A stretch of 64,000 nucleotides of DNA, taken from positions 124,001 to 188,000 of the IMG/VR virus record IMGVR_UViG_3300020471_000004; one strand, written 5' to 3'. The notes beneath the pieces were generated by a model. The model saw nothing but the letters and a program-made list of their open reading frames with translations, had not been told where the DNA came from and made no database searches. The translations under genes and the position numbers were made by a program. This document shows, piece by piece, positions 2,315-37,027 of the stretch; the first letter of the stretch is position 1, and every line of letters starts with the position of its first letter.

Positions 2315-2759
2315 TAGTAAAGTTATGAAAGTTCGAATGAGTCCCCGAAAGCAGTCTGGCGTTATTGCTTTCAAAGTAACCAACAAAATGAACGTCAAGT
2401 TCCTGCTAATTAGAAAAACTGGCAGCAACAAGTGGGGCTTCCCTAAAGGTAAGGTAGAATCTCACCTTACTAAAAAGCAAAGTGCGTTGGTCGAGGCACA
2501 TGAAGAAGGCGGAGTTTCAGGTAAGATAATAAAGTCTATAGGTCGGTACCGCTATATTAAGAATAAAACCAAACGGGTACAATTAGTGGACTTATTCTTA
2601 ATGGAGGTTACCAAAACACACAAAGAATATTTAGAGATTGCTCGCGAACGCAGATGGTTTACTTACAAGGATGCGTTAAAAGTATTACCTAAAGAGCAGA
2701 TGCCTTTTCTAGTTTTAGCAGGTCACTATATTGAGCAAGAAGAAGGCTTAATGGTATAA
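2292..2759 (+). CDS. Nudix hydrolase
   Basis: Nudix box WGFPKGKVESHLTKKQSALVEAHEEGGV; RERRWF motif typical of Ap4A/DIPP-type Nudix enzymes. Confidence 0.85.
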   Translation: MKAQISLSSKVMKVRMSPRKQSGVIAFKVTNKMNVKFLLIRKTGSNKWGFPKGKVESHLTKKQSALVEAHEEGGVSGKIIKSIGRYRYIKNKTKRVQLVDLFLMEVTKTHKEYLEIARERRWFTYKDALKVLPKEQMPFLVLAGHYIEQEEGLMV

Positions 2760-2815
2760 CTTTACTATGCTGGTACAATACAGCAGTAGTATGCCTATGC
2801 TTATATTGCTATAAT
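2757..2815 (+). promoter_or_regulatory. Class-I phage promoter (TAACTTTAYTAA-N3-GGTACAAAA ... TGnTATAAT), variant GGTACAATA
   Basis: GGTACAATA 2772-2780, 29-nt spacer, TGC-TATAAT with TATAAT at 2810-2815. Confidence 0.7.
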
Positions 2816-2851
2816 GCGCTTATTGTCATTACTTGAACAGGATACCTATTT

Positions 2852-4021
2852 ATGACGAAGCGCAAACAGAAACAACTTAAACGCCAAAACCGTAAAGCAA
2901 AACAAGCTAAACAAAATAAGGCTAAACCTAGCTTTACTCCTAAGCTTATTATTACCGAAGGTTCTGAAAACATGGCCTGTATATTAGGTGTATTGCAGGC
3001 AGCAGATTTGAAAGAAGAGGTGCGTTTTTTACTAGACCGCGTGTCTAGTTTGTCAGGCCACAAGCCTACAGGTGCATATTCTGATACGCAAGTTTCAGAG
3101 ATAGTTAACTCTAACCCTACTCAATATTCTAATGTTTTTAAGAGCAGTAGAGAAAAAGTTACAGATTGTGTTAAAAGATTGCGTAACTCTTTCTATAACC
3201 TTTTAGACGGTCAAGCAGTCGGATCTTTAACGTTGACTGACCAAAGTGAGCATACCGAAGTAGATAATATGCTCAGTCTATCTATTGCTATGCTTGAGAC
3301 TCTTGAAGACAAAAAAGTTAGACACTTTGTATCAACTTCTGACAAAAGGTTGATTGAGCCTTTTGAGGACGCTTTTGCAGTAGATGTAAAAGAAAGTAAA
3401 TTTGCATGTAAGCCGTTTATATTCGAGTTCTGTACCAGTACAGCTCAGAATAAATTTGTGTTAGTTTCTTTTTACTTCCAAGAGGCTATGCATTTTGCGA
3501 TATTTAATTACCGCAATGAGGTAGATGATTACCAGATAATTTCTATCCACAAACATGTAATAGAAGAAGGCGAAGAAGGTCTAGAGGCCGTTCAAGACCT
3601 TGCTGGAAATGCCGCTTTAGCTTTTTATTCTATACACGAGGAGATGCTTTATGAGACTCGTATGTATTCTTCTAGTAACATGAGTGCTACAAGTGTTTAT
3701 TCATGTGTAGGTTCTTATTTTCTTTTTAGAGCTTTAGGTAGGGTAAATGAACTGACTATCAAACAGGCGTCACCTAGGAGTTCACAAGCCCCTAAGCCTG
3801 TAACAACTGATGCACCTATTGAAGTATGCCCTTACACTAAGCTTGATGATTTTACTACCCAAATCGTTTCGCGTAAAGGTATTGGTCTAGGTGCGACACA
3901 TGCAAGCCCTGTTGAGCATGTCCGTAGAGCACATGAGCGCAAGTACCGTGACTCTAGCGGTAACGTTGTTAAAATAGTGGAAATCGCACAATCAACTATA
4001 AATAAAGGTCATGTAAAATAA
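2852..4021 (+). CDS. Hypothetical protein; basic N-terminus and C-terminal HxRRxH motif
   Basis: 389 aa; MTKRKQKQLKRQNRK start; SPVEHVRRAHERKY near the C-terminus. Confidence 0.8.
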   Translation: MTKRKQKQLKRQNRKAKQAKQNKAKPSFTPKLIITEGSENMACILGVLQAADLKEEVRFLLDRVSSLSGHKPTGAYSDTQVSEIVNSNPTQYSNVFKSSREKVTDCVKRLRNSFYNLLDGQAVGSLTLTDQSEHTEVDNMLSLSIAMLETLEDKKVRHFVSTSDKRLIEPFEDAFAVDVKESKFACKPFIFEFCTSTAQNKFVLVSFYFQEAMHFAIFNYRNEVDDYQIISIHKHVIEEGEEGLEAVQDLAGNAALAFYSIHEEMLYETRMYSSSNMSATSVYSCVGSYFLFRALGRVNELTIKQASPRSSQAPKPVTTDAPIEVCPYTKLDDFTTQIVSRKGIGLGATHASPVEHVRRAHERKYRDSSGNVVKIVEIAQSTINKGHVK

Positions 4022-4072
4022 GCTATAGACTGCCTACATTAAACAAGTTGCTTCTCTTAATAAGGAAATAGT

Positions 4073-4495
4073 ATGCAAACACTTTTAAATTTCTTAGAAG
4101 AAAGTAGAACCAATCTCAGGCTTTCTATAGTTCACTATTCTGACTACCCTACATTTAAAATGGACACAAAGCTTAGTTTGAAGTTGGTGTCTGTAGATTA
4201 CCCTGATAAAGTTGTGTTGGTGATAAAAGAACCTTTGATGCGGACAGACCTAGATCCTGATATTTGCTATGAACTAGCACAAGGTTCCGGCACGACCGTA
4301 GCTGAGGCAATCGGTAATTTTTTACGCAAGGTAACCAAAGAAACGGTCGTGGTAGTCGATACAACTGACTCTGCTAGTGACTTTAAAAGCTTCCCTATAC
4401 TTGCTGAATATAAAGCCCCTTCATTTAATCTAGATATTGCTGTAGAGCTTGTACACCAGTACAGAAACTCCCTGTGTGACATTCTAGGCATCTAG
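4073..4495 (+). CDS. Hypothetical protein
   Basis: 140-aa ORF preceded by AAGGA. Confidence 0.7.
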   Translation: MQTLLNFLEESRTNLRLSIVHYSDYPTFKMDTKLSLKLVSVDYPDKVVLVIKEPLMRTDLDPDICYELAQGSGTTVAEAIGNFLRKVTKETVVVVDTTDSASDFKSFPILAEYKAPSFNLDIAVELVHQYRNSLCDILGI

Positions 4496-4502
4496 ACTCC
4501 TA

Positions 4503-4526
4503 AAGAGGACGCAATTGCGTCCTCTT
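4503..4526. terminator. Perfect 24-bp palindrome (terminator or protein-binding site)
   Basis: AAGAGGACGCAATTGCGTCCTCTT directly after the stop at 4495. Confidence 0.55.
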
Positions 4527-4537
4527 CCTATATCTCC

Positions 4538-4622
4538 TATCTTAATTAACTTGGTACAAAACACCAGTATACTAGACCCCTCCCCTTTGCTATAATTGGT
4601 TCATGTTGTGAAGAAGCACAGC
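4538..4622 (+). promoter_or_regulatory. Class-I promoter with leader hairpin
   Basis: GGTACAAAA 4553-4561, 29 nt, TGC-TATAAT 4591-4596, leader ATGTTGTGAAGAAGCACAGC 4603-4622. Confidence 0.8.
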
Positions 4623-4688
4623 GCGCCTTAGCTTGCTAGCTAGGTGAGCCTGCTTTAAACGGCATTCGCTGATTTACGCTTGTTTGCT

Positions 4689-4773
4689 TAACTTTATTAA
4701 GCTGGTACAAAACAACCGTATTCGTAAAACTTACTTTTTGCTATAATAGGTACATGTTGTGAAGAAGCACAGC
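4689..4773 (+). promoter_or_regulatory. Class-I promoter with leader hairpin
   Basis: TAACTTTATTAAG 4689, GGTACAAAA 4704-4712, 29 nt, TATAAT 4742-4747, identical leader 4754-4773. Confidence 0.85.
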
Positions 4774-4811
4774 ACACCTAATTTTTAAACGTCATTATTT
4801 GGAGACTACTT

Positions 4812-5591
4812 ATGACTACTTTCGCTACCGCTAAGAAAATCACCACTGCACAAGTTAACGCTGTTGAAAAATTTGCCGCAAAAGCAATTGACGCAACTAC
4901 CAAAACACAAGAACGTAAGGTTCAACTTGGTAAGCGCATTAGCGTTGAAGGTAAGCGTTACACAATTGAAGGCCTTCGCCGCACTGGTAAGAATCCTGTT
5001 TTCTTTTTGCAAGCTACCACAAAAGATAAAACAATCATCGAGGTGCCGGTGTCAACTATCGCCGAGTTGGTTACTGCCAAGAAAGCAAATAAGAAAACCA
5101 AGCCTGCTTCTACTAAAAAGCCAGGTGTTAAGAAAACTGGTAGCAGACGTAAAGTGCCTCTTACTTTAGAAATGCAGGTTGAAGAACTAACTGCTCGCGT
5201 TCATTCGCTAGAGAAGTTCATTGTTGAAATGCGCTCTGATTTGTTAAAAGAAGCCGCTAAAGAGTTCGGTAAAGTAGTTGGTGAAAGCACAGCCAAACAA
5301 AAGAAGACCAAGACTAAAACAAAGGAAAAGCCTGCTAGCTCGTTAGTTTCATTCGATCATTTTGTTCTAGTTACCGAGAAGGATCCTAGAGAACGCCCTT
5401 TCAGAAAGCTGTCTGGAGCAACTGCTTTCCATAAAGCTAAGAAAGAGAGTGCCACTGTTTACGGTGTCACCGAGTCAGGTAAGAAAACTAAACTTAAGGT
5501 CTTTGCTACTAAAGATCCTGTTTCTAAGAAAGAAACACGTAGCCGCAAATGGCACTGGGCAACAAAGCGTACTGCTACTAAGTTCGCTTAA
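4812..5591 (+). CDS. Lys-rich hypothetical protein (possible nucleic-acid binder)
   Basis: 259 aa; GGAG RBS; K/T-rich tracts (KKANKKTKPASTKKPGVKK, KQKKTKTKTKEK). Confidence 0.8.
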   Translation: MTTFATAKKITTAQVNAVEKFAAKAIDATTKTQERKVQLGKRISVEGKRYTIEGLRRTGKNPVFFLQATTKDKTIIEVPVSTIAELVTAKKANKKTKPASTKKPGVKKTGSRRKVPLTLEMQVEELTARVHSLEKFIVEMRSDLLKEAAKEFGKVVGESTAKQKKTKTKTKEKPASSLVSFDHFVLVTEKDPRERPFRKLSGATAFHKAKKESATVYGVTESGKKTKLKVFATKDPVSKKETRSRKWHWATKRTATKFA

Positions 5592-5615
5592 TTGAAAAAG
5601 CTTATTCGTAGTAAG

Positions 5616-5645
5616 GAGACTGCACCGAGGTGCAGTCTTGTTTAT
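5616..5645 (+). terminator. Intrinsic terminator
   Basis: AGACTGCAC-CGAG-GTGCAGTCT followed by TGTTTAT. Confidence 0.65.
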
Positions 5646-5669
5646 CTTAAATAATTAACCGAGGTTTTT

Positions 5670-5864
5670 ATGGAAAAGTTTACACCACCTTTCGCAGAAA
5701 TGTTTCAGCGTGATATGAAACTACATGCCGAGAAATTGCTAAAGGAATACGGCACTAATTCTGTCGGTGTTCAATGTTGCACAAAGGTATCTGAAACAAA
5801 AGGTATGCTAGAAGTCTATTACTTTATAAAAGACGAAGACAATACCGAAGACGGTACTGAATAG
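5670..5864 (+). CDS. Small hypothetical protein
   Basis: 64 aa; GAGG RBS. Confidence 0.65.
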   Translation: MEKFTPPFAEMFQRDMKLHAEKLLKEYGTNSVGVQCCTKVSETKGMLEVYYFIKDEDNTEDGTE

Positions 5865-5865
5865 C

Positions 5866-5950
5866 TATCTTTAATACGTTGGTACAAAACAGTGGTGCTT
5901 GCCACCGCTGCTTTTTGTTATAATAGCTACATGTTGTGAAGAAGCACAGC
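5866..5950 (+). promoter_or_regulatory. Class-I promoter with leader hairpin
   Basis: GGTACAAAA 5881-5889, 29 nt, TGT-TATAAT 5919-5924, leader 5931-5950. Confidence 0.85.
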
Positions 5951-5982
5951 ACAATTTTTGACATTATTTGAGGAACCTATTT

Positions 5983-6651
5983 ATGTCACGTATTAACAAA
6001 AAACTTGCTCAGCACATTGTTCACCTTCAAAACGAAAGCGTACCACACTTGGTAGACCTTATTCTACGCAAGCAGGCGAAATCGCCTAGCCTGCCTAAGC
6101 ACTTTGATAAGAGTGTTGATTACTACAAAGGTTGCCTAGATTCTCTTTACACCCAGATTGAATCTTTGTTGTTTATGCATAACGTGTATTACGGTTACAG
6201 AGAGTCAGTAGTGAGAGGCGTTTCTATTCGCCGCTATGTTTTCCCTGATGAATGTACCAACGTGGTGTCTGTCTCAGAGCTTAAAAGAAAGTGTACTGAG
6301 AAGTACATTAGCTCTAGCCTAATCGAAGCAGAGAGAAGTGCTAAAGAGTATCAGCCTGAGCATAACCTAGATTACACTATCTATCAAGCTGAGGAAGCTA
6401 TACCAACGACTTGTCGTCCGTATATCCGACTTAAAACAAAAAGCGGTAGCTATGCTTACCTGATGACCAAAACTAAGACAGTTACTAAAGCACTCCTTGA
6501 AGGTGCTGAGCTTAACTTTGTTGCATATACTCCTGACGGTGTTGCGGTATATGATTTACAAAACCAACACGCTTTTCATAACGTTATTACTGCAGGTGAC
6601 GAGTTTGAAAATTACTTTATTCTTCACCGCCCTGATGAAGTACCAGCATAA
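5983..6651 (+). CDS. Hypothetical protein
   Basis: GAGGA RBS before ATG 5983 (the track starts at TTG 5968). Confidence 0.7.
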   Translation: MSRINKKLAQHIVHLQNESVPHLVDLILRKQAKSPSLPKHFDKSVDYYKGCLDSLYTQIESLLFMHNVYYGYRESVVRGVSIRRYVFPDECTNVVSVSELKRKCTEKYISSSLIEAERSAKEYQPEHNLDYTIYQAEEAIPTTCRPYIRLKTKSGSYAYLMTKTKTVTKALLEGAELNFVAYTPDGVAVYDLQNQHAFHNVITAGDEFENYFILHRPDEVPA

Positions 6652-6661
6652 GGAAAAAAAA

Positions 6662-7090
6662 ATGAAAGCTGTATCTGCATTACGCGCATTAAGAAAGGCG
6701 CAAAAATCTTTGGCTTCAACTGAAGAGCGAATTAAAGAACTACAGGCAGAGCTAGACTCTGCCTATGAAGACAAACAGACGTTTTCAGACGCTACACATA
6801 CTCTAACTAAGTTGCTAGTAGAAGCTAGAGCCAAAGAAGACCCAGAAGGTTTCTATTTGTTCATTAAGGGTATGTGTACTAATAGTTGTCGCCGTATGCC
6901 TTATTCTAAAGAAGTAAAGTCTCTAGATAGGGCCTTAAAGCAAGGTGTACCAGAAGACTGTTACGAGGCCCGTCTAGTTGTTGTATTCAACAAGAAGGGC
7001 AAACGTGATAAAGTTATTGCTAAACAAAACATCAATCAGTGGGATATAACCCCTGCAGGTAAAAAGACAATTAAGGAACTGTCGCTATGA
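6662..7090 (+). CDS. Hypothetical protein with N-terminal coiled coil
   Basis: AAGGA RBS before ATG 6662; heptad-like ALRKAQKSLASTEERIKELQAEL. Confidence 0.7.
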   Translation: MKAVSALRALRKAQKSLASTEERIKELQAELDSAYEDKQTFSDATHTLTKLLVEARAKEDPEGFYLFIKGMCTNSCRRMPYSKEVKSLDRALKQGVPEDCYEARLVVVFNKKGKRDKVIAKQNINQWDITPAGKKTIKELSL

Positions 7091-7689
7091 TAAATATTAA
7101 GAATGTAAATGTAGAAGCTGTTTTCCACGAAAAGTACGGAAACTCGCCTGAGATTAAAATAGAGGTTAAGGAAGAAGGTAAAGCAAACCCTTTTATGTGC
7201 TTTGAGCATGGAGGTAAAGACTTTCTCCTTTCACTAACTAACGGTGTCGGTAAATACGGTATCTACGGTAACTCGAAAGAAAGAGAACTTTTTCAAAGAA
7301 GAGGTACCTACACGGTGCTTGTCTTAGATAAAGACGAAAAGACTGTGGTAGAACGCAAGTATCGAACTTGGTCAAGTTCTCGCCCTTCTATTATGAACGA
7401 GGTATTCGCTCTTGAAGGAGATAATTACCTAACAGACTGCGAGGTACGACTTGAATGTAACAGGTCACCTGTAGGTAACGCCACAGTAGGTTTACTTAAA
7501 CAGTTGAAAGACCAAGTAGAAGGCTTTTTTATTCTTGCTTGCTTAGACCTAGAGGATTTTGACGATTACGGAGAAAAAGTAATTCGTTACTTCCCTAGTT
7601 TACAGGCAGACCGCTTTGACTTCGGTCCTGAATGTGAATGGAAAGCAAAGCGGTTCAGCAAAGATTACCAAATCTTGGAAACACTGTAA
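7087..7689 (+). CDS. Hypothetical protein
   Basis: 200 aa; ATGA overlap with the upstream stop. Confidence 0.7.
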   Translation: MINIKNVNVEAVFHEKYGNSPEIKIEVKEEGKANPFMCFEHGGKDFLLSLTNGVGKYGIYGNSKERELFQRRGTYTVLVLDKDEKTVVERKYRTWSSSRPSIMNEVFALEGDNYLTDCEVRLECNRSPVGNATVGLLKQLKDQVEGFFILACLDLEDFDDYGEKVIRYFPSLQADRFDFGPECEWKAKRFSKDYQILETL

Positions 7690-7700
7690 ACACAATAAAT

Positions 7701-7720
7701 AGCGGGGCATTGCCCCCGCT
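7701..7720 (+). terminator. GC-rich hairpin
   Basis: AGCGGGG-CATTGC-CCCCGCT in the intergenic gap; weak U-tract. Confidence 0.45.
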
Positions 7721-7738
7721 GTATACGTAGAGAAAATT

Positions 7739-7900
7739 ATGCTTACTCTGGACGATTTTATTAGCGACTACCAGCACTTGGTTGTCCGTAATATGAATAA
7801 AGATGGTCAGCTTCTTAAAAACCAAGCTTTAGCTCACGTAGAGAAATACTACACTCACTGTAAAGCAGAGTGTTTAGATTTTCTAAACAGAAAAAGTTAA
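7739..7900 (+). CDS. Small hypothetical protein, 53 aa (not in ORF track)
   Basis: ATG 7739 to TAA 7900, MLTLDDFISDYQHLVVRN..., fills the gap; GAGA upstream. Confidence 0.5.
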   Translation: MLTLDDFISDYQHLVVRNMNKDGQLLKNQALAHVEKYYTHCKAECLDFLNRKS

Positions 7901-7933
7901 CCCCTCGGCATTATTTATCAAAGGAGATTACTT

Positions 7934-8296
7934 ATGCCACGCGCAATCGAAGTAGAACACAAACGTTGGACCCAGACTTCTGTATTGATCGATACAGGTG
8001 AGTACAGTTACATATACGGTTACTACCAAGGTAACGCCGTTAAAACTATAGGTATGCGGTGGAACGGTAAAGGTCAAGACGCAGGTTACCCTAAGCTATT
8101 TAAGCGACCTGTATGGTTTAATATTCCACAAGAGCTTACTTTGCCTACTTTACTTATGCTTAGTTCTCACCTAGCTTTAACTTATGCAGGTCCTGTTCTT
8201 TCAAAGAACGGCACGATGACAAAAGCAGAGTTTGACGAGTACACCATCAACATCAAATCAGCTATCGCTAACTGTAGAGAAGGAAACCTACTATGA
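7934..8296 (+). CDS. Hypothetical protein
   Basis: 120 aa; AAGGAG RBS; aromatic motif IGMRWNG...GYP...VWF. Confidence 0.75.
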   Translation: MPRAIEVEHKRWTQTSVLIDTGEYSYIYGYYQGNAVKTIGMRWNGKGQDAGYPKLFKRPVWFNIPQELTLPTLLMLSSHLALTYAGPVLSKNGTMTKAEFDEYTINIKSAIANCREGNLL

Positions 8297-9060
8297 AAAC
8301 TTGTAACTTCCATATAGCGTGGGTCGGAAAGTGTAAGGCAAAAGTAGTTGAAGGTACTGACTATTGCGAAGACCATACTGTTGGTTGTGAAGTATGTGGT
8401 GCGCAGGCTACTGACTCTTGTGACCATACAGGTTCACTGGTTTGCGGAGCACCTTTGTGTGGTTCAGTTCTTTGTAAGTACAAGCACAGGTTCACCAAGC
8501 ACTGTAGTTCAGGTAGCTTTAACTTAGCAACTTTGCCTTACCTTATTTTTGATTTTTGCCAAGGTACTGCTCAGACTAGCGTTAGTTCTATGAAGCAGGT
8601 AACGAGTGCTATGCGTACAACACTCCGAAATGAACAAAAGTTTTATAACCAATACATGCCTGAAAAGGCAAAAGAAAGAGCTTTTTCTTACACTCGATGG
8701 GCTGCAACTATTGACCTGCTAGAGACTTTGTTGGACAAGTGCATAGACTTTCAACTTAATACAGGTTTTGCGTTTGCCGACGAGATAGATAACATGACGG
8801 TGAAAATATATCGGGTCTGTATTACTGATCCTGCTCGAAATAAAGCACACGTTTTCTTTATACGACCTTGGTTAGAAAGCAGCGCATTCACTTTCTTAAA
8901 GGGTTTACCTTCTGTAACACACTTGGAAATAGATGCAGATGAACAGGCATGCATTAAGTTTTTCAAAGAGGGTATGTTTGTCCAAAACGCTTTCCCTACA
9001 CTAGCGCCTGAGGTTCGGGAGTATTTAATCACAGGTCTTTTGCCAGAGGAGCAAGCGTGA
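8293..9060 (+). CDS. Hypothetical protein with Cys/His-rich N-terminal (Zn-binding) domain
   Basis: CNFH..C..YCEDH..CEVC..CDH..CGAPLC..LC..HRF..HC in the first 75 aa. Confidence 0.75.
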   Translation: MKTCNFHIAWVGKCKAKVVEGTDYCEDHTVGCEVCGAQATDSCDHTGSLVCGAPLCGSVLCKYKHRFTKHCSSGSFNLATLPYLIFDFCQGTAQTSVSSMKQVTSAMRTTLRNEQKFYNQYMPEKAKERAFSYTRWAATIDLLETLLDKCIDFQLNTGFAFADEIDNMTVKIYRVCITDPARNKAHVFFIRPWLESSAFTFLKGLPSVTHLEIDADEQACIKFFKEGMFVQNAFPTLAPEVREYLITGLLPEEQA

Positions 9061-9448: not shown

Positions 9449-9507
9449 TAGGTACACTAAATAGGTACAAAATAACTATATTCCCTGTATGGGTATTTTG
9501 CTATAAT
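9449..9507 (+). promoter_or_regulatory. Class-I promoter
   Basis: GGTACAAAA 9464-9472, 29 nt, TGC-TATAAT 9502-9507. Confidence 0.75.
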
Positions 9508-9537
9508 AAGCATATTGAACGAACTGAGGAAAAGCAC

Positions 9538-9867
9538 ATGTTGCATACCGGTAATACTTACACTTTAAAACACTTATTCAATCTAGACCTGACAGACGTA
9601 CCTAGTCTGTCGGTAATAGTTGAAGGTAACGAGTCTCCTATTCAACACAGCCATATGACTGTTTCGGATTTTTTAGATCAACCTGAATGGGCAGAGACTA
9701 AATGGGTTTTCTTATTCACTACGCATGAGGAGATTCCTTGTTTCGTAGCTTCGAATAGCCAAGAGGTTCTTAAATTGGTTACAGTTGAAGAACCTGTAGA
9801 CAGGTATCTTGATTACTGGATAGTGCCTAAATCGCACCCTAGAGAACAGTACGGTGTTTCAAAATGA
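9538..9867 (+). CDS. Hypothetical protein
   Basis: GAGGA RBS before ATG 9538 (the track start 9442 overlaps the promoter). Confidence 0.7.
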   Translation: MLHTGNTYTLKHLFNLDLTDVPSLSVIVEGNESPIQHSHMTVSDFLDQPEWAETKWVFLFTTHEEIPCFVASNSQEVLKLVTVEEPVDRYLDYWIVPKSHPREQYGVSK

Positions 9868-16878: not shown

Positions 16879-17556
16879 ATGAACCATGACTTAGCAAAAA
16901 TACTTTTTAAATCTCATTACGACCAGCCTTGGAGAATCTTCCATTCTTGGCGTCACATAGAGCACGGACTAGAAGCACTACAAGAGTTTATTTATGCCAA
17001 AGAGCTTGATAAATCAGATAGCGAAATAAGAAAGATTGTTCGCCAACACCGTGACTTGCTTTACATTGCTTGGTATATGCATGACTTGGTTTATGTTCCT
17101 AAACACGAAGGTAATGAACAAGCAAGCGCAGACCTAGTTCCTTACTATGCACCTATGTTGATTCCTAATATTGATTTAGAAGGTATCCAAACAATCTCCC
17201 GTCTTATCCTGTGTACAAAAGATCACAAGGTAGTAGACAGGCTGTTCCCAGGTACCCCTGTGTCCAAAGAGCTTGAAGCTTTAAGCAAAGTAATGATTGA
17301 TATTGATCTGATAGGCTTTGCCAAATATCACCCTATGACTTCTTTGTGGGTAAGGGAAGAATTTGAATCGGTCTTGGTTCAAATAAAAGACGAAGACGGT
17401 CTAGATGACTTCGACCGAAAGTGGCGCCTAGGTCAATCTGATTTCTTAACAGGCCTTTTGCTGAAAGACAACCTTTATCAAACAGGTTATTTCCAGTCCA
17501 ATTATCAACAAGAGGCTTTGGCTAATATCCGTGCTGAGGTAGACAGTTACAAATAA
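16879..17556 (+). CDS. HD-superfamily metal-dependent phosphohydrolase
   Basis: YDQPWRIFHSWRH, WYMHDLVY, NEQASA, TKDH and DIDL motifs. Confidence 0.8.
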   Translation: MNHDLAKILFKSHYDQPWRIFHSWRHIEHGLEALQEFIYAKELDKSDSEIRKIVRQHRDLLYIAWYMHDLVYVPKHEGNEQASADLVPYYAPMLIPNIDLEGIQTISRLILCTKDHKVVDRLFPGTPVSKELEALSKVMIDIDLIGFAKYHPMTSLWVREEFESVLVQIKDEDGLDDFDRKWRLGQSDFLTGLLLKDNLYQTGYFQSNYQQEALANIRAEVDSYK

Positions 17557-17614
17557 CTTTATTAAGTCGGTACAAAACAGCCTTCTAGTTTACCGACTTC
17601 CTATATAGTATAAT
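17554..17614 (+). promoter_or_regulatory. Class-I promoter (31-nt spacer, no TGn)
   Basis: TAACTTTATTAAGTCGGTACAAAA 17554-17577; TATAAT 17609-17614. Confidence 0.65.
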
Positions 17615-17646
17615 GCACATGAAGTCAACAAGTTTATGGAGTATTT

Positions 17647-22744: not shown

Positions 22745-23757
22745 AAATAGGATTTGCATGTAAGTACTTTCATCCTGACCGAACTTTGCCTGCCAAAGCT
22801 CTCAAAGAGGAAGAACAAAAATACAACTTTAAATCTACTACTGCAAAATGGTTAAAGGATAACCCTAAACTTGCCTACAAGCGGTTAGAAGAAATTTGTA
22901 TCTACAACGCCGAATGTGTGGTTCGTTTAGTAGACCTGGTTAGTAGCTGGGCCGTGCCGCTAAGAATGTTACGCATAGGGAGCGATGTACTCCCTATGTA
23001 TACCCACAAAGATTTCAGAACTTTCTACAAAAAAGCCCCCTTTATGCAAGAAGTGGAAAACTTACTTGCAGCCGCAGGTCATCGTGCGAGAGCTGCAGGC
23101 GTCAAACTCTCAATGCACCCTGGTCAATTTTGTGTACTTGCTTCTACCAAGCCTGATGTGATTGCCAATTCAATAGAAGAATTCGAGTACCACGTAGACG
23201 TTATCCGAATGATGGGCTACGCCAAGTCTAAACTTGATTTCAAGTGCAATGTCCATCTTTCAGGTGCAGGTGGTGCCGACAAATTCCTATCTACTTACCA
23301 AAAGCTTTCAACCGAAGCCCGCCGCGTTATCACTTTAGAGAATGACGAGTACACCTCCGACCTAAACGACCTGCTGCCTCTAGCAGACTATGTAGGTATC
23401 GTGCTTGATATTCACCACTACTGGATATACAACCATTCTTTTATCTCCTCACAAGACCCTAGACTTGAAATAATAGAGCAATCTTGGCAAGGCAGGCGTC
23501 CCACTATTCATTACTCGTACAGCCGAGAAGAGCATTTAAAAGGTCTTACTGGCACAAAGCCTGACCTGAATGCTCTTGTATATTCAGGCATCCCTAAGTC
23601 TAAACTAAGAGCACATTCTGATAGTTATCCTAATCCTGCAATGAATAGGTATGCACTGGAGTTTCTGCCTCAATTTGATATTATGTGCGAAGCCAAGAAC
23701 AAGAATGAAGCAAGCACACTCCTATACAAGCAGGCGGTACGCGTAGGTGTACTCTAA
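22741..23757 (+). CDS. uvsE: UV damage endonuclease (UvsE/UVDE)
   Basis: MKIGFAC, RMLRIGSD, LSMHPGQF, EFEYH, ITLENDE, VLDIHH, AHSD and DIMCEAKNK motifs. Confidence 0.92.
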   Translation: MKIGFACKYFHPDRTLPAKALKEEEQKYNFKSTTAKWLKDNPKLAYKRLEEICIYNAECVVRLVDLVSSWAVPLRMLRIGSDVLPMYTHKDFRTFYKKAPFMQEVENLLAAAGHRARAAGVKLSMHPGQFCVLASTKPDVIANSIEEFEYHVDVIRMMGYAKSKLDFKCNVHLSGAGGADKFLSTYQKLSTEARRVITLENDEYTSDLNDLLPLADYVGIVLDIHHYWIYNHSFISSQDPRLEIIEQSWQGRRPTIHYSYSREEHLKGLTGTKPDLNALVYSGIPKSKLRAHSDSYPNPAMNRYALEFLPQFDIMCEAKNKNEASTLLYKQAVRVGVL

Positions 23758-23839
23758 CTGTATTAAGTCGGTACAAAACAGTATATGTTAATACTCGCTT
23801 AATTTGTTATACTTATTAAATGTTGCGAAGAAGCGCAGC
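23755..23839 (+). promoter_or_regulatory. Class-I promoter with covariant leader hairpin
   Basis: GGTACAAAA 23770-23778, 29 nt, TGT-TATACT 23808-23813, leader ATGTTGCGAAGAAGCGCAGC 23820-23839. Confidence 0.85.
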
Positions 23840-23861
23840 ATATTATTTAGGAGCATTTATT

Positions 23862-24594: not shown

Positions 24595-24999
24595 ATGGTT
24601 TATATTATTAAACCTATAGGCAGTCTTTACGTTTCCTTACGTGACTTTTTGTCCAAAGCAAATGCGATAAAGAACCTTGATAAAAAGCTGGATGCTTTAA
24701 GAGTAGAGTTTGAAACCAACGGTCGAAGTCGAGAATGGTTCAAAGCTGTCCGTTCTATAGTGCTTGACGTTGCTCGTCACAGAAAAGCTCTTGAGCCTTA
24801 TACGACCTCAACGCTTGCTACCTTAATAAAGATAGTTGGCCCTAACACCGTGCTTAATACGTTGGTAGACGGCAGGTATTTGAATAGACAGGTAGCAGAT
24901 AACCTTCTGTCTGAATATAACGAAACATCTTACATGGTAGACAAGAAAGTAAAGGACTTGCGCCTAGCTAAGTGTATCAAGGGTAACTTTACTAAATAG
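24595..24999 (+). CDS. Hypothetical protein
   Basis: 134-aa ORF. Confidence 0.65.
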   Translation: MVYIIKPIGSLYVSLRDFLSKANAIKNLDKKLDALRVEFETNGRSREWFKAVRSIVLDVARHRKALEPYTTSTLATLIKIVGPNTVLNTLVDGRYLNRQVADNLLSEYNETSYMVDKKVKDLRLAKCIKGNFTK

Positions 25000-25042
25000 G
25001 TACAAAATAGACCATTACGCAGAACACAAATTTTGCTATAAT
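24984..25042 (+). promoter_or_regulatory. Class-I promoter
   Basis: TAACTTTACTAAATAGGTACAAAA 24984-25007, 29 nt, TGC-TATAAT 25037-25042; degenerate leader TTGTTGTCGCAGCAAAGCGCAGC. Confidence 0.8.
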
Positions 25043-25095
25043 GTAATTGTTGTCGCAGCAAAGCGCAGCAATCAAACAAACTTTCGGAGATACAA

Positions 25096-25468: not shown

Positions 25469-25545
25469 TAACTTTACTAAAGTGGTACAAAACACCATAT
25501 ATACGTACCCCTGTAGTTTTGCTATACTGTATGCATGTTGTGACA
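25469..25545 (+). promoter_or_regulatory. Class-I promoter with ATGTTGTGA leader
   Basis: GGTACAAAA 25484-25492, 30 nt, TGC-TATACT 25523-25528, ATGTTGTGA at 25535. Confidence 0.8.
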
Positions 25546-25594
25546 GACAGCATACAAACTTTCGTTAAACAAACAAACTTAAAGGAAATTCAAA

Positions 25595-27439
25595 ATGGCT
25601 AAAGTTCAAACAAACGAAGCAATGGTTGGTAAGCGCATCAAACTAGAAGATGGCAGCCGTGTTAAAATCCTAGAAGCACAGGCTTCTGGTTACAAACTAT
25701 CTAACGGTGACCGATTACCTGCTCGTAAAGTTGAAAAGCGCGGTCGCAGTTTTATCGAAACTGATCTTACTATGCGTGACCTAGAAGATACAGGTGAAGG
25801 TTATGTTGTTAAGCCTGGTTCTGAGGAAGCATCACCTAAGAAATCAGCCACGCGCAATAAAACAACTGGTAAGAAGAAAACTACCAGCAAGAAAAAAGAA
25901 ACAGGTCGTACAACTCGCAACTCTAAAACCAAAACCAAAACCAAAACCAAGTCTAAGTCAAAAACAAAAGACTCGGAAGAGACGCGTACTAATCGTAAGA
26001 CTAAAACCACGCGTAACAAAAAGAAAGACGATGCCCCGTCTTCTAAAAAGACCGTTTCGCGCCGCCGTACTAAGGCGAAAGAAGAAAAGGTTGAAACTAA
26101 GCCAGCTCGTAACCAAGAAGTCGAGTTGAAAAACAAGTCTCAGATGGAAAAAATTCAAACAGCTATTCGTTTAGCTGTCGGTGAGATCTTAGCGCCTTAC
26201 ACAAACATTGATAGTCAGAGCACTTGTTTGATGGCTAATCCTCCGAAGAGCGCGTTCTCGGTAACGATTGAAGTTAAAACTTCTCTAGTTAAGCCTGAAC
26301 ACCACAGCCTAAGCTATTACAAAGCAATTGCTAAGGAAGCAGGTGCTCGAATCATTACGCTTAAACCTAATATTCAGGCAAAGATTGCAGAACGCCTTGA
26401 ACCTGAAGAGTCTGTACGTGATTCGTTTGTTTTAGAATACGGTGATATTCTTCTTGATGAAGACGGTACTACCAAGCTTGTTTATTCAGGTGTTAACGTA
26501 AGAGAAAATAAGTTTGTTCTGGTTAACATGTCTACCGAGCAAGTTATTGAAATCGGCTTATCAGGTTTTGATAGCCTAGATACTACTGGCGTAAACGTTA
26601 CAAGTCTAGGTATGACTATTGAAGAATACAACCAGGAACTTGAAAACGCTGCCGATGTTGATGATGACGAGTTTGCTATTGATTCCGATGAAGATAAAAC
26701 TCCGCTTGAATCTTTAGACTGGGACAACACTGACCACGAAACTTTAGTTGATTTGCTTTCGGATGTTTACACCGAAGAAGAGCTGATTGCTTTCGCAGAG
26801 CAAATGGACGCGTCCGAAGAAGAGCTTGAAGCACCGATTAGCGAGTTGATTGAAATGATCGTTGCAGCACAAAAAGAAGAGTCGGAAGACTTTGAAGACG
26901 CAGACGAAGAACCTGAGTCGGACGAGCTAGAGCTTGGTGATATTGAAATGGACGAAGATGATCTTGAAACAGAAGATGATCTAGACCTAGAGGACGCCGA
27001 AGACCTAGACGGTATAGAAGAAGTTGTCGAAAACAAACTTTCTATTCGTGAAATGGCCGCAGCGTTGATAGAGTCAGGTGACTATACGCCTAAAGGTTTG
27101 AAGCGCCTGTCTGATGATGAAATCGAGCAGGAGTATCAAGACCTAATCGGTGACCAGGAAGAAGAAGCTGAAGAGCTTCCGTCTCTTGAAGAAATGAAAG
27201 AGACTCTTCTGTCAGACGGTCAAGTAACACCTAAAGGCTTAAAGCGTATGGAAGACGAGGAGATTGAAAGTCTTTACATTGAAGTATACGGTGATGAAGT
27301 CGAAGACGACCAAGACGATGTAGATATGCTTTTCGATGCCGACTCTGTTGAAGACGAAAACGACCTTGACTTAGAAGGCGAAGATGACGATGAAGAAGAC
27401 CTAGATCTAGAAGGCGAGTTAGAGTCTGAATTTGAATAA
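25595..27439 (+). CDS. Polyampholyte protein: basic K/T-rich tract followed by very acidic C-terminal half with two TPKGLKR repeats
   Basis: 614 aa; KKKTTSKKK...KTKTKTKTK tract; D/E-rich tail; repeats at T498 and T545. Confidence 0.85.
   Translation: MAKVQTNEAMVGKRIKLEDGSRVKILEAQASGYKLSNGDRLPARKVEKRGRSFIETDLTMRDLEDTGEGYVVKPGSEEASPKKSATRNKTTGKKKTTSKKKETGRTTRNSKTKTKTKTKSKSKTKDSEETRTNRKTKTTRNKKKDDAPSSKKTVSRRRTKAKEEKVETKPARNQEVELKNKSQMEKIQTAIRLAVGEILAPYTNIDSQSTCLMANPPKSAFSVTIEVKTSLVKPEHHSLSYYKAIAKEAGARIITLKPNIQAKIAERLEPEESVRDSFVLEYGDILLDEDGTTKLVYSGVNVRENKFVLVNMSTEQVIEIGLSGFDSLDTTGVNVTSLGMTIEEYNQELENAADVDDDEFAIDSDEDKTPLESLDWDNTDHETLVDLLSDVYTEEELIAFAEQMDASEEELEAPISELIEMIVAAQKEESEDFEDADEEPESDELELGDIEMDEDDLETEDDLDLEDAEDLDGIEEVVENKLSIREMAAALIESGDYTPKGLKRLSDDEIEQEYQDLIGDQEEEAEELPSLEEMKETLLSDGQVTPKGLKRMEDEEIESLYIEVYGDEVEDDQDDVDMLFDADSVEDENDLDLEGEDDDEEDLDLEGELESEFE
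25925..25948 (+). repeat. (AAAACC)4 in-frame hexamer repeat
   Basis: Encodes KTKTKTKT. Confidence 0.7.
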
Positions 27440-31219: not shown

Positions 31220-31240
31220 GGTCTTCCTTCTCACAAAACA

Positions 31241-32350: not shown

Positions 32351-32447
32351 TAGTTGATGTCTTTCGAATTTTAATTTTTTAACTTTTACATTGCAGGGAA
32401 GTTGTTAACAGTAAACACTTCCCTTTATAACAAACTGGAGAACAAAA

Positions 32448-32963: not shown

Positions 32964-33004
32964 TCGAATGGATGCTTTTTAGCTAGGTGTTAGAAAGCAA
33001 TATC

Positions 33005-33040
33005 GGGCCGTTAGTTTATACTGCGGCCCTTTATTCGTTT
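33005..33040 (+). terminator. Intrinsic terminator
   Basis: GGGCCG/CGGCCC stem followed by TTTATTCGTTTTT. Confidence 0.55.
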
Positions 33041-33053
33041 TTAAAGGTATTTT

Positions 33054-33934: not shown

Positions 33935-33943
33935 GGAAGTTTG

Positions 33944-35974: not shown

Positions 35975-35985
35975 GGAAAAATATT

Positions 35986-36453
35986 ATGGACAAGATAAAC
36001 TCTGTGGATGTGTACCTTCTTTTGGATATTGTGTTTACTCCTTTATTCGATGAAAACACAACTTCTATTATGAATATGAATGTCTCTAAACCTATTTGGG
36101 TAGAAACTTCTTTGCTGGTTGAAGGTAACCAGCTAATTTTCCCTACGTTTGTCTTGTCTGTGGTTTGTCCTTTTGTTATTACTAAAGAAGGAAAGATTCT
36201 TAAATGCCGATATAACCCTGCTCTTGAAGGTATCTCCTTTTTTGGGTACGAACTAGAGCTGCTTGAAGGAATGTGTATTCGCACAAAAAATCAAGAGTGG
36301 GATTGGGAATCTTTAACTTCTAAGCATCACAGTTATGCATCTTTAAAATCAGTTTACGGAAGCATGGATGAATTTCGAAGGACGATAGACCAGTATCCTT
36401 ACGATAACTCGTTATTAAAGTCAATTTTAGAGGAAGCAGAACTTGAACTCTGA
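35986..36453 (+). CDS. Hypothetical protein
   Basis: 155 aa; AAGGA RBS. Confidence 0.7.
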   Translation: MDKINSVDVYLLLDIVFTPLFDENTTSIMNMNVSKPIWVETSLLVEGNQLIFPTFVLSVVCPFVITKEGKILKCRYNPALEGISFFGYELELLEGMCIRTKNQEWDWESLTSKHHSYASLKSVYGSMDEFRRTIDQYPYDNSLLKSILEEAELEL

Positions 36454-36970
36454 TATAGGTAAAACAGAATACGATTCTTTTGCTTTGATTTTCATTGAAT
36501 CGATTTATCAACCGATAAACTTAGCAAGCGAGTCAGGGTGGTACAAGCTACCTTGCATAGTTAATCAAGAGGCTCAGACTATAGTGGCACTGAGTACCCA
36601 AAGTCTATTCACTTCTCGCATAACTATCACTAGTGACCGTTTTATTAGGAAGTGGCCCAGTGCTTTACCCCTGGTAGGAAAGCAAATACTGCCGCCTACT
36701 TTTGAAGAGCTTGAAACTAAAGCGGTTGAAGTAAAACAAGAGCATGTTCCTTTTATGTTCAAACAAGGCTCACCTAGCCAATTAGGGTTTACTGATGTTG
36801 AATATAAGCAATTGTGGTCAGGTAAGATATACGAGACACCTACTGCACCTTTTGCAGACCTTTACAAACTGTTTAGAGACATTACTGTTAAGGCATGTCC
36901 TGATTTGTTCAAACAAGGTACTCCCTTAGATGCAGATGCTGATGACGGTTCAGGTTGCTCTACTTGCTAA
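36443..36970 (+). CDS. Hypothetical protein
   Basis: 175 aa; TTG start; C-terminal GCSTC. Confidence 0.65.
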   Translation: MNSDIGKTEYDSFALIFIESIYQPINLASESGWYKLPCIVNQEAQTIVALSTQSLFTSRITITSDRFIRKWPSALPLVGKQILPPTFEELETKAVEVKQEHVPFMFKQGSPSQLGFTDVEYKQLWSGKIYETPTAPFADLYKLFRDITVKACPDLFKQGTPLDADADDGSGCSTC

Positions 36971-37027
36971 CTTTATTAAGTCGGTACAAAACAGACTATA
37001 AACTTATACGTGTGTTTGTGTTATAAT
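36968..37027 (+). promoter_or_regulatory. Class-I promoter upstream of topoisomerase A
   Basis: TAACTTTATTAAGTCGGTACAAAA 36968-36991, 30 nt, TGT-TATAAT 37022-37027. Confidence 0.8.

What the first reader, a model, noticed from the sequence alone, without database searches (positions are those of the whole stretch)
2757..37027. Ten-copy bipartite promoter with a conserved -65..-42 box and no -35 hexamer
Seen in sequence: TA(A/T)CTTTA(T/C)TAA-N3-GGTACAAAA followed by 29 nt (7 copies), 30 nt (2) or 31 nt (1) and then a TATA(A/C)T -10. GGTAC starts at 2772, 4553, 4704, 5881, 9464, 17569, 23770, 24999, 25484 and 36983. The distal TAACTTT half is degenerate at 4538, 5866 and 9449. Nine of ten copies have the extended TGn, and none has TTGACA at 17 bp. 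In four copies the leading TAA is also the upstream gene's stop codon. Established: extended -10 promoters work without a -35, and UP elements at -40..-60 are simply A/T-rich. Inference: the invariant GGTAC with fixed spacing implies a sequence-specific activator or RNAP-modifying phage factor, defining a regulon that includes gyrA.
Basis: partly seen in the sequence, partly recalled or inferred. Interest (0 to 1): 0.72.

Follow-up and report, generated by a model that had tools for sequence, protein, structure and literature searches.

The report
Jumbo-phage early promoters with −46 box
A marine giant phage starts ten of its gene blocks (including its gyrase A gene) from near-identical promoters that pair a perfect host-type −10 box with a conserved upstream box instead of a −35. 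The core of that box is kept in distant relatives infecting other hosts, which points to an unidentified protein contact that recruits the host RNA polymerase.

Summary
Ten co-oriented copies sit at the stated coordinates, and an eleventh lies elsewhere in the 232.7-kb genome. None appeared in 30 random simulations, and no other site in the genome scores near them.

The genome is a marine-metagenome jumbo phage of the PaBG/Lu11/NCTB/Dickeya-Erwinia ('Lupandier') group. These phages have no RNA polymerase of their own but do carry a sigma factor.

These sites are almost the only host-sigma70-type promoter sequences in the genome. They are therefore most likely the early, host-polymerase promoters.

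Comparison with relatives gives the key result. The core G(G/T)(T/G)ACAAAA, 28-30 nt upstream of TGnTATAAT, is kept in phage NCTB, in a 243-kb Tara Oceans phage (GGGACAAAA) and in Dickeya phage AD1 (cTGGACAAAA). It sits at orthologous positions in each, while the DNA between and around the elements is not conserved. PaBG has a different box.

About half of the predicted transcripts start with a stem-loop. One cassette gain or loss in a 92-94% identical relative is bounded by the promoter box, as with T4 PeSL cassettes.

What binds the core was not identified. It could be a phage factor or the polymerase alpha C-terminal domain. I call this a new variant of a known kind and rate its interest as moderate to high.

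The parts
2757..2822 (+). Class-I promoter 1. Distal box starts at 2757, core GGTACAATA at 2772-2780, TGC + TATAAT at 2810-2815, predicted start 2822. Drives the 389-aa ORF 2852-4021.
4503..4530 (+). Terminator-like hairpin (AGAGGACGC-AATT-GCGTCCTCT followed by a T-rich tail) just upstream of promoter 2.
   Evidence: read directly from the sequence
4538..4603 (+). Class-I promoter 2 with a degenerate distal half. Core at 4553-4561, -10 at 4591-4596, predicted start 4603. There is no ORF before promoter 3, so this is either a tandem promoter or the start of a ~150-nt non-coding transcript.
4689..4754 (+). Class-I promoter 3. Core at 4704-4712, -10 at 4742-4747, predicted start 4754. Drives the 259-aa ORF 4812-5591.
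   Evidence: A metatranscriptome contig begins at about 4756-4759, which is only weak support.
5866..5931 (+). Class-I promoter 4 with a degenerate distal half. Core at 5881-5889, -10 at 5919-5924, predicted start 5931.
9449..9514 (+). Class-I promoter 5 with a degenerate distal half. Core at 9464-9472, -10 at 9502-9507, predicted start 9514. It drives a small acidic protein (9538-9867). The AD1 homologue of that protein also follows a class-I promoter.
17554..17621 (+). Class-I promoter 6, the only copy without TGn and the only one with 31-nt spacing. Core at 17569-17577, -10 at 17609-17614, predicted start 17621. Its operon begins with the Arg-rich protein 17647-18156 and contains the winged-helix protein 19847-20344.
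23755..23820 (+). Class-I promoter 7, immediately after uvdE. Core at 23770-23778, -10 TATACT at 23808-23813, predicted start 23820. The position is conserved in the 92-94% relative, NCTB, the Tara-243kb phage and AD1. The 20-bp stretch 23759-23778 is the repeat that bounds a cassette gain or loss in the relative.
24984..25049 (+). Class-I promoter 8. Core at 24999-25007, -10 at 25037-25042, predicted start 25049.
25469..25535 (+). Class-I promoter 9 (30-nt spacing). Core at 25484-25492, -10 TATACT at 25523-25528, predicted start 25535. It drives the 614-aa ORF 25595-27439. The orthologue of that gene follows a class-I promoter in NCTB, Tara-243kb and AD1 as well.
36968..37034 (+). Class-I promoter 10 (30-nt spacing). 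Core at 36983-36991, -10 at 37022-37027, predicted start 37034. Drives the gyrase/topo IV subunit A-like gene.
37065..38672 (+). Gyrase / topoisomerase IV subunit A-like gene (535 aa), a member of the regulon.
   Evidence: Pfam PF00521, E 2e-67; 64% aa identity to the NCTB 'DNA gyrase subunit A'
4605..4622 (+). 5'-terminal stem-loop of transcript 2 (GTTGTG-AAGAAG-CACAGC).
4755..4774 (+). 5'-terminal stem-loop of transcript 3 (TGTTGTG-AAGAAG-CACAGCA), -7.6 kcal/mol.
5932..5951 (+). 5'-terminal stem-loop of transcript 4, with the same sequence as in transcript 3.
23820..23841 (+). 5'-terminal stem-loop of transcript 7 (ATGTTGCG-AAGAAG-CGCAGCAT). It carries a compensatory T-A to C-G change relative to copies 2-4.
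25049..25069 (+). 5'-terminal stem-loop of transcript 8.
25535..25553 (+). 5'-terminal stem-loop of transcript 9 (ATGTTGT-GACAG-ACAGCAT).

Best explanation
These are the phage's host-RNA-polymerase (primary sigma, sigma70-type) promoters, most likely the early class.

Shown: each unit is intergenic, co-oriented with the next ORF and 24-60 nt upstream of its start. Each carries a consensus extended -10 (T-rich, then TGn, then TATAAT or TATACT) and no usable -35.

Inferred: sigma regions 2 and 3 read the -10 and the TGn. The missing -35 contact is replaced by an upstream anchor, the 9-bp core G(G/T)(T/G)ACAAAA at about -50 to -42, helped by an A/T-rich segment at -65 to -54 that differs between lineages.

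Three observations bear on what reads the core. It keeps invariant G and C positions and its spacing across phage genera with different hosts. The DNA between the elements drifts freely. In AD1 the G/C positions are kept better than the A-run. From these I infer that the core is read base-specifically by one small, probably monomeric protein that is common to these phages or to all their hosts' polymerases.

My first choice is an unidentified phage-encoded adaptor or activator. It could be delivered with the DNA, or made from the basal activity of these same promoters. It would touch sigma region 4 or the alpha C-terminal domain, and the A-run would double as the proximal alpha-CTD site.

About half of the transcripts then start with a stem-loop at +1 to +22. 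This is most simply a 5' stabiliser against 5'-end-dependent decay.

The repeated cassettes also act as recombination points for gain and loss of small early genes.
For: Anatomy and statistics:
- Ten copies lie in the window and an eleventh in the genome. All are co-oriented with genes, and none arose in simulations.

The only host-type promoters:
- 10 of the 12 intergenic TGnTA(T/C)A(A/C)T matches listed are class-I -10 boxes; the other two are a match inside the core of promoter 1 and one site at genome 124141, minus strand.
- No intergenic -35/-10 pair scores above 10/12.

No phage polymerase:
- This phage group has no RNA polymerase but has sigma factors (PMC7824862).
- The orthologue of the PaBG sigma gp118 lies at genome 116,717-117,715 (36% identity, E 6e-66). 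It is too divergent to match the Pfam sigma region 2 or 4 models. That makes it an unlikely reader of a perfect TATAAT.
- A second, separate motif, AAAACTGTAAA(C/T)A, precedes many other genes (20 observed against 1.9 expected) and is also conserved in AD1. It is the natural target for the phage sigma.

Phylogenetic footprint:
- NCTB has at least 7 copies of TAACTTTTTTATC-N2-GGTACAAAA-N29-TGCTATAAT.
- The Tara 243-kb clade has 4 copies of GGGACAAAA-N28/29 within 21 kb.
- Dickeya phage AD1 has at least 10 copies of CTGG(A/T)C(A/G)AAA-N29/30.
- At the orthologous promoter just after uvdE in five genomes, the blocks of invariant columns are G.ACAAAA and T-A-.-A-.-T of the -10; a few scattered spacer and leader positions are also invariant.
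- The 92-94% identical relative has substitutions in spacers and flanks but none in the core or the -10.

5' stem-loops:
- They start at +1/+2 in 6 of 11 copies here and in 15 of 30 across four lineages. Their sequences differ between lineages, and there is one compensatory change within this genome.

Cassette behaviour:
- A ~0.46-kb indel carrying one ORF is flanked by the 20-bp box repeat.
Against: - No transcription start site was mapped. The only RNA data are low-depth metatranscriptome contigs. One starts 2-5 nt from a predicted start, another runs straight across promoter 4, and DNA carry-over cannot be excluded.
- No candidate factor is conserved in all genomes that carry the box. The Arg-rich protein is absent from AD1. 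The winged-helix protein is confined to the marine clade. No MotA or AsiA homologues were found.
- An early promoter cannot depend on a protein that has not yet been made, unless that protein is injected or the dependence is only partial.
- The A-run at -45 to -42 fits the proximal UP subsite, and in AD1 and the Tara phage a second A/T-rich repeat lies 10 bp upstream. Two alpha-CTDs could therefore explain much of the box. The 28-31 nt tolerance in spacing also suits a flexible alpha linker.
- The upstream block holds about 38 bits, far more than the ~15 needed to specify 11 sites. Part of the within-genome identity may therefore come from recent duplication or gene conversion.
- The early timing is inferred, not shown.
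Confidence: 0.5

Rival explanations
1. The box is an unusual but ordinary UP element. One or two alpha C-terminal domains of the unmodified host polymerase bind the A-run at -45 to -42 and the A/T-rich segment about 10 bp upstream. No other protein is involved. The G/C positions are kept for DNA shape, or because the cassettes are copies of one another.
For: - The A-run sits where the UP consensus has AAAA (established knowledge of rrnB P1 and SELEX UP elements; from memory, not tested here).
- AD1 shows ATAAAAC-TGG-ACAAAAC and the Tara phage ATATAAC-GGG-ACAAAAC, which are direct repeats 10 bp apart.
- The spacing tolerates 28-31 nt.
- Conservation across hosts fits the near-invariant alpha-CTD of Gammaproteobacteria.
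- Early promoters must work on naive polymerase.
Against: - UP elements are A/T-rich with low information content. Here G-49 and C-46 are invariant in about 30 promoters from four lineages.
- In AD1 the A-run is interrupted in natural variants (ACGAAA, ACAGAT) while TGG..C stays.
- PaBG, which infects another gammaproteobacterium, uses a different box at a different distance.
Confidence: 0.3
2. These are middle promoters. They are used only after an early phage product remodels the host polymerase so that -35 recognition is lost and extended -10 promoters are favoured. Known examples are the Thermus phage P23-45 proteins gp39/gp76 and T4 AsiA with a MotA-like activator. Alternatively they are read by the phage's own RpoD-like sigma.
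For: - An extended -10 without a -35 is the signature of such classes (established knowledge, from memory).
- The phage encodes a sigma and a winged-helix regulator within the regulon.
- Replication genes such as gyrA are typical middle genes.
Against: - No other candidate early promoter class resembling the sigma70 consensus exists in the genome.
- No MotA or AsiA homologues were found.
- The phage sigma is too divergent to be expected to read a consensus TATAAT.
- Another conserved motif is available for the phage sigma.
Confidence: 0.1
3. A host transcription factor or nucleoid protein binds the box, and the phage exploits a host regulon.
For: A fixed position near -46 to -60 is typical of class I activators. 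The distal half is specific to the lineage, as would be expected if hosts differ.
Against: - The core is shared by phages of Dickeya and of unknown marine hosts, so the factor would have to be conserved across orders.
- The core matches none of the consensus sites I could recall (CRP, FNR, NtcA, IHF, Fis, LexA, OmpR, marbox). This is from memory only.
- The site is short and not palindromic.
Confidence: 0.05
4. The upstream box has no role in transcription. It is kept identical by recombination between cassettes, or serves as the recombination site itself.
For: An indel is bounded exactly by the 20-bp box repeat. The block holds excess information. T4 PeSL cassettes provide a precedent (PMC2839356, PMC4122927).
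Against: - Homogenisation would also keep the spacers, and these differ completely between copies.
- The core and its distance to the -10 are kept between genomes whose proteins are only 38-44% identical.
Confidence: 0.05

Closest known systems
T4 early promoters (host sigma70, with conserved upstream A-tracts, boosted by the injected ADP-ribosyltransferase Alt acting on the alpha subunit)
   Same: Many near-identical, very strong-looking host-polymerase promoters in front of small early genes. There are conserved positions upstream of -35, including an A-run near -42. The phage group is one that, like T4, relies on the host core polymerase plus a phage sigma (PMC7824862).
   Different: T4 early promoters keep a -35 (GTTTAC-like); these have none. 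Here the upstream element contains invariant G/C positions. No Alt-like enzyme was looked for or found.
T4 middle promoters (MotA box plus AsiA: sigma appropriation)
   Same: A sigma70 -10, often extended, combined with a 9-bp non-palindromic box that replaces the -35 and is read by a monomeric phage activator.
   Different: The MotA box is centred at -30; this box is centred at about -46. No MotA or AsiA homologues were detected. These appear to be the only sigma70-type promoters in the genome, so they cannot all wait for an early gene product.
UP elements (rrnB P1 type, alpha-CTD sites at -40 to -60)
   Same: Same position. The A-run at -45 to -42 matches the proximal subsite. An A/T-rich segment lies one helical turn upstream.
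   Different: Much higher information content, with invariant G-49 and C-46. The G/C part is conserved better than the A-run in AD1.
PeSL mobile regulatory cassettes of T4-type phages (PMC2839356, PMC4122927)
   Same: Repeated early-promoter-plus-stem-loop units flank small ORFs of unknown function. A gene gain or loss between close relatives is bounded by the repeat.
   Different: PeSL promoters are -35/N17/-10 types. The phage family is different. Here the stem-loop lies at the transcript's 5' end rather than acting as the preceding terminator, although one upstream terminator is present at 4503-4530.
Extended -10 promoter classes of Thermus phage P23-45 (gp39/gp76 disable -35 recognition)
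   Same: A phage promoter class defined by TGn + -10 without a -35.
   Different: Those are middle and late promoters with no conserved upstream box. There is no evidence here for a factor that displaces sigma region 4.

Membership tests
sigma70-type extended -10 promoter | -10 hexamer close to TATAAT | tested here: met
   TATAAT in 7 copies and TATACT in 3 of the window's 10
sigma70-type extended -10 promoter | TGn one base upstream of the -10 | tested here: met
   9 of 10; absent at 17569
sigma70-type extended -10 promoter | -35 hexamer absent or dispensable | tested here: met
   Best match is 3/6 at 17-18 bp. None is found by the -35/-10 scan.
sigma70-type extended -10 promoter | Transcription starts 6-8 nt downstream of the -10 | tested here: inconclusive
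   Only sparse metatranscriptome contigs were available. One begins at ~4756-4759 against a predicted start of 4754, and one crosses promoter 4. Stem-loops beginning at the predicted +1/+2 give indirect support.
UP element (alpha-CTD site) | A/T-rich sequence at -40 to -60 with A-tracts near -42 and -52 | tested here: inconclusive
   There is an A-run at -45 to -42 and an A/T-rich segment upstream. However, G-50/-49 and C-46 are invariant and lie outside the consensus.
UP element (alpha-CTD site) | Bound by the alpha C-terminal domain | not testable with these tools
   Complex prediction with the E. coli alpha-CTD and the box DNA was not folded and gives no evidence.
T4 MotA/AsiA middle promoter | Activator box centred at about -30 | tested here: not met
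   The box is centred at about -46, 29 nt from the -10.
T4 MotA/AsiA middle promoter | MotA and AsiA homologues encoded by the phage | tested here: not met
   Pfam MotCF and AsiA give no match in six-frame searches of the whole genome, even at E 10. Very divergent analogues cannot be excluded.
PeSL mobile regulatory cassette | Repeated early promoter associated with a stem-loop | tested here: met
   11 repeats. A stem-loop lies at +1 to +22 in 6 of them, and a terminator hairpin lies upstream of promoter 2.
PeSL mobile regulatory cassette | Indels between close relatives bounded by the motif | tested here: met
   One case: a ~0.46-kb cassette in the 92-94% relative, flanked by the 20-bp box repeat.
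PeSL mobile regulatory cassette | -35/N17/-10 promoter in a T4-type myovirus | tested here: not met
   There is no -35, and the genome belongs to the PaBG/NCTB group.

The most novel reading that the evidence does not exclude
The G(G/T)(T/G)ACAAAA core at about -46 is the binding site of a so-far unrecognised small phage protein. That protein would be conserved from marine NCTB-like phages to Alexandravirus and possibly delivered with the DNA. It would tether host sigma70 holoenzyme to extended -10 promoters that lack a -35. This would be a third way of replacing the -35 contact, besides T4 MotA/AsiA and plain UP elements. It could come with a coupled 5' stem-loop / Arg-rich-protein (N-like) layer acting on the same transcripts.
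Probability: 0.35. Interest if true: 0.78.

Novelty: new variant of a known kind. Interest (0 to 1): 0.6.

Why it matters
Jumbo phages without their own polymerase must capture the host enzyme within seconds of infection. How the PaBG/NCTB/Alexandravirus group does this has not been described: the papers I could read on PaBG and on the Dickeya phages report no promoters.

A promoter class defined by a base-specific box at -46, conserved across phages of different hosts, gives three things:
- A precise handle for finding the responsible protein, or a new mode of alpha-CTD recognition.
- A ready annotation rule for the early regulons of abundant ocean phages.
- A set of compact, strong, -35-independent promoter parts.

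Because Dickeya phage AD1 carries the same architecture, the question can be tested directly in an enterobacterial laboratory system.

Tried and rejected
- **TATAAT avoidance.** I tested whether TATAAT is avoided genome-wide as a sign of host sigma70 pressure. It is low against a mononucleotide expectation but not against other A3T3 hexamers or a maximal-order Markov expectation (126 observed, 130.5 expected). I dropped the argument.
- **IMG/VR pattern scans.** Core + spacing + -10 gave only chance-level single hits. One unrelated contig had a triplicated promoter. Distal half + core gave 4 hits, about what chance predicts.
- **Searches for relatives.** The gyrA protein search of IMG/VR found nothing. 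The metagenome scan found only an identical contig. The genome-contig scan for a host carrying the phage found nothing. Megablast and tblastn of window segments against the phage collection found nothing.
- **RNA families.** Rfam has no family in the window.
- **Sigma models.** The Pfam sigma region 2 and region 4 models do not detect the sigma orthologue. Neither does a PDB sequence search.
- **Arg-rich protein 17647-18156 as the box reader.** Its N-terminus is identical across the marine clade, which fits. But AD1 has the box without the protein, and PaBG has the protein with another box.
- **Winged-helix protein 19847-20344 as the box reader.** It occurs only in the marine clade.
- **Complex prediction.** The job with the alpha-CTD and the box DNA was not folded.
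- **Known binding sites.** Comparison with recalled consensus sites of host factors (CRP, FNR, NtcA, IHF, Fis, LexA, OmpR, marbox) gave no match. This is from memory only, not a database test.
- **A displaced -35.** AD1's TGGACA matches TTGACA at 5/6, but it lies 32 nt from the -10 and has no -10-like hexamer 17 bp downstream.
- **A possible third promoter class.** TAATTT(A/T)A is not enriched (34 observed, 57.6 expected).


Full report
**What the window is.** The window is positions 124,001-188,000 of a single 232,692-bp contig with 40.6% G+C. Marine metagenomes hold it almost completely. Its gyrase-A-like protein is 64% identical to that of phage NCTB, a 258-kb genome, and the neighbouring genes are in the same order. 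It is about 44% identical to the Dickeya and Erwinia jumbo phages AD1, the JA phages and Yoloswag. PMC7412058 groups NCTB, PaBG, Lu11 and those Dickeya/Erwinia phages as the 'Lupandier' group and reports a divergent sigma70-like factor in PaBG. PMC7824862 places these phages among jumbo phages that lack an RNA polymerase but encode sigma factors and a gp33-like protein. The phage therefore depends on the host core polymerase throughout infection.

**The observation.** A weight matrix built from the 30 nt around the core finds the ten sites plus one more on the minus strand at genome position 30,845. These score 23-43 bits, and nothing else in the genome reaches 10 bits. The composite pattern occurs 11 times against zero in 30 first-order Markov simulations. 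None of the sites has a -35 match better than 3/6, and the generic -35/-10 scan misses them all. In this phage and in NCTB a weak TATAC lies 17 bp from the -10. It is absent in the Tara phage and AD1.

**Place in the genome's signals.**
- 10 of the 12 intergenic matches to TGnTA(T/C)A(A/C)T that the scan lists are class-I -10 boxes.
- No intergenic -35/-10 pair exceeds 10/12. These are therefore the only convincing primary-sigma promoters.
- A second motif, (T)AAAACTGTAAA(C/T)A, occurs 20 times against 1.9 expected. It usually lies 38-70 nt before start codons, on both strands, including in the structural-gene block.
- The orthologue of the PaBG sigma is at 116,717-117,715. It is so divergent that Pfam and PDB sequence searches miss it.
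- The simplest assignment is that the host sigma reads the TATAAT class and the phage sigma reads the CTGTAAA class. This is an inference. It leaves open how the sigma gene, which itself lies behind CTGTAAA motifs, is first expressed.

**Comparative evidence.**
- NCTB carries at least seven copies of TAACTTTTTTATC-N2-GGTACAAAA-N29-TGCTATAAT.
- A 250-kb contig that is 92-94% identical to the window has the same promoters, with substitutions only in spacers and flanks.
- A 243-kb Tara Oceans phage, whose neighbouring proteins are about 38% identical, has four copies in 21 kb with GGGACAAAA and 28-29 nt spacing.
- Dickeya phage AD1 has at least ten copies with CTGG(A/T)C(A/G)AAA and 29-30 nt spacing. 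It also conserves the CTGTAAA(C/T)A motif.
- The promoter sits at the same place in all of them: directly after uvdE, and before the orthologue of the 614-aa protein. In an alignment of the five uvdE-downstream regions, the blocks of invariant columns are G.ACAAAA and the T-A-.-A-.-T of the -10, plus a few scattered positions.
- PaBG instead has AAACATAACCGCTAT 33 nt from an extended -10, in at least three copies, and no ACAAAA-type sites above control.
- The architecture is therefore group-wide. The ACAAAA core is shared by the marine clade and Alexandravirus. The distal TAACTTT half is specific to the lineage.

**What reads the core.** Two readings remain.

For a dedicated factor:
- G-49 and C-46 are invariant in about 30 promoters.
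- The third position changes in concert within each genome: T here and in NCTB, G in the Tara phage and AD1.
- In AD1 the A-run is broken in natural variants while TGG..C persists.
- The information content far exceeds that of known UP elements.
- PaBG uses another box although its host has the same kind of alpha subunit.

For direct alpha-CTD recognition:
- The A-run lies at the proximal UP position.
- AD1 and the Tara phage show a second A(T/C)A(A/T)AAC repeat 10 bp upstream.
- The spacing tolerates 28-31 nt.
- The core is conserved across hosts.
- Early promoters must work on naive polymerase.

I favour a factor, possibly one working together with the alpha-CTD, at roughly 5:3. I searched for candidates:
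- No MotA or AsiA homologues were found.
- A winged-helix protein (window 19847-20344) is encoded in the regulon. Its Pfam matches to HTH_34 and PadR are weak. An AlphaFold model with mean pLDDT 60 has only MarR/PadR-type regulators as its Foldseek neighbours. It is confined to the marine clade.
- A conserved Arg-rich protein (17647-18156) is missing from AD1.
- The structure-prediction test of the alpha-CTD on the box was not run by the tool.

**Transcript 5' ends.**
- Six of the eleven predicted transcripts begin with a 6-8 bp stem-loop at +1/+2, with folding energies of -6.6 to -10.3 kcal/mol. One copy carries a compensatory T-A to C-G change.
- Across four lineages, 15 of 30 leaders have such a hairpin, with different sequences. 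This supports the predicted start sites indirectly.
- The simplest reading is protection of the 5' end from decay.
- An alternative rests on several leads: the loop AAGAAG; a first-gene product with an N-terminal Arg-rich helix, whose language-model neighbours include lambda N-type antiterminators at low scores of 0.72-0.74; and internal terminators. Together these allow an N/boxB-like antitermination layer. This is a lead only.

**RNA evidence.** It is thin. Four marine metatranscriptomes contribute eight short contigs over 2500-8400. One begins 2-5 nt downstream of the predicted start of promoter 3. One spans promoter 4 and so would be read-through. DNA carry-over cannot be excluded.

**Genome plasticity.** Relative to the window, the 92-94% relative has an extra ~0.46-kb unit with its own promoter and a 116-aa ORF. 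It is bounded by the 20-bp repeat TGTATTAAGTCGGTACAAAA. This mirrors the promoter-stem-loop cassettes (PeSLs) that mediate gene shuffling in T4-type phages.

**Verdict.** The finding is real, and it is a promoter class. The promoters are most likely the early, host-polymerase promoters of a widespread marine jumbo phage. They belong to a conserved architecture of the NCTB/Alexandravirus lineage that the literature available to me does not describe. The recognition mechanism of the -46 core is unresolved but experimentally accessible through Dickeya phage AD1.

Noticed in passing
window 7683, 22098, 30628, 31244, 33342, 53482 (start of ACTGTAA); also many sites outside the window: A second promoter-like motif, (T)AAAACTGTAAA(C/T)A, occurs 20 times in the genome against 1.9 expected. 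It is mostly 38-70 nt upstream of start codons, on both strands, including in the structural block. It is conserved as (A/T)(A/T)CTGTAAA(C/T)A in Dickeya phage AD1. It is probably the target of the phage sigma and resembles the T4 late TATAAATA in being a single block.
   Followed up: partly
window 17647-18156: The first gene after promoter 6 encodes a 169-aa protein. Its N-terminus (MPRKVTKTMREARKRA..) is Arg/Lys-rich and near-identical across the marine clade, and its C-terminus (..CIAPAYNKGAYQYI..) is strongly conserved. It is present in NCTB, the Tara-243kb phage and PaBG (gp133) but not found in AD1. Language-model neighbours include lambda N-type antiterminators at low score. Together with the 5' stem-loops (loop AAGAAG), this suggests a possible N/boxB-like system.
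   Followed up: partly
window 19847-20344: A 165-aa protein in the same operon has weak Pfam HTH_34/PadR matches. Its AlphaFold model (core pLDDT 70-86) has only MarR/PadR winged-helix regulators as Foldseek neighbours. It is conserved in NCTB (50%) and the Tara phage (56%) but was not detected in other phage records.
   Followed up: partly
window 4603-4753: Promoter 2 is followed by about 150 nt without an ORF before promoter 3. This is either a tandem promoter pair for ORF 4812-5591 or a small non-coding RNA that begins with the conserved stem-loop. Rfam finds nothing here.
   Followed up: partly
L140:7700-8180 versus window 23759-23778: The 92-94% identical relative carries an extra promoter + 116-aa ORF cassette bounded by a 20-bp direct repeat of the promoter box. 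This is a PeSL-like gene gain or loss.
   Followed up: yes
L061 (IMGVR_UViG_3300014029_000157) 88, 4777, 5374: An unrelated 7.7-kb viral contig has three copies of a long repeat, CTGGACACCAG.TAATTCCGCCAGAACTGC-GGTACAAAA. In two of the three, TGTTATAAT follows at the same 29-nt spacing. This may be coincidence, because the scan selected for exactly that pattern.
   Followed up: no
L015 / PaBG record positions ~4485, 98476, 102178 (minus strand): Pseudomonas phage PaBG has its own repeated upstream box, (A/T)AAACATAACC(G/A)CTA, 33 nt from an extended -10 and followed by 5' hairpins. The architecture is the same but the box is different.
   Followed up: partly
genome 121,554-121,725 (outside the window; L146:14554-14725): This intergenic stretch reads like one or two tRNA genes (for example GCCCCTATAGCTCAGTTGGTAGAGCA...). 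It was not run through the tRNA finder.
   Followed up: no
whole genome: GATC is at about half its mononucleotide expectation (435 against 845), while GTAC, CTAG and TGCA are slightly above expectation. This may reflect avoidance of a restriction or Dam-type site.
   Followed up: no
genome 22,600-22,907 and 89,532-89,725 (minus strand, outside the window): Two long, very A/T-rich intergenic regions end in TTAATTTTATAGTA before structural-block genes. Similar TAATTT(A/T)A sequences precede about a dozen genes, but the short motif is not enriched genome-wide (34 against 57.6 expected). A third promoter class is possible but unproven.
   Followed up: partly
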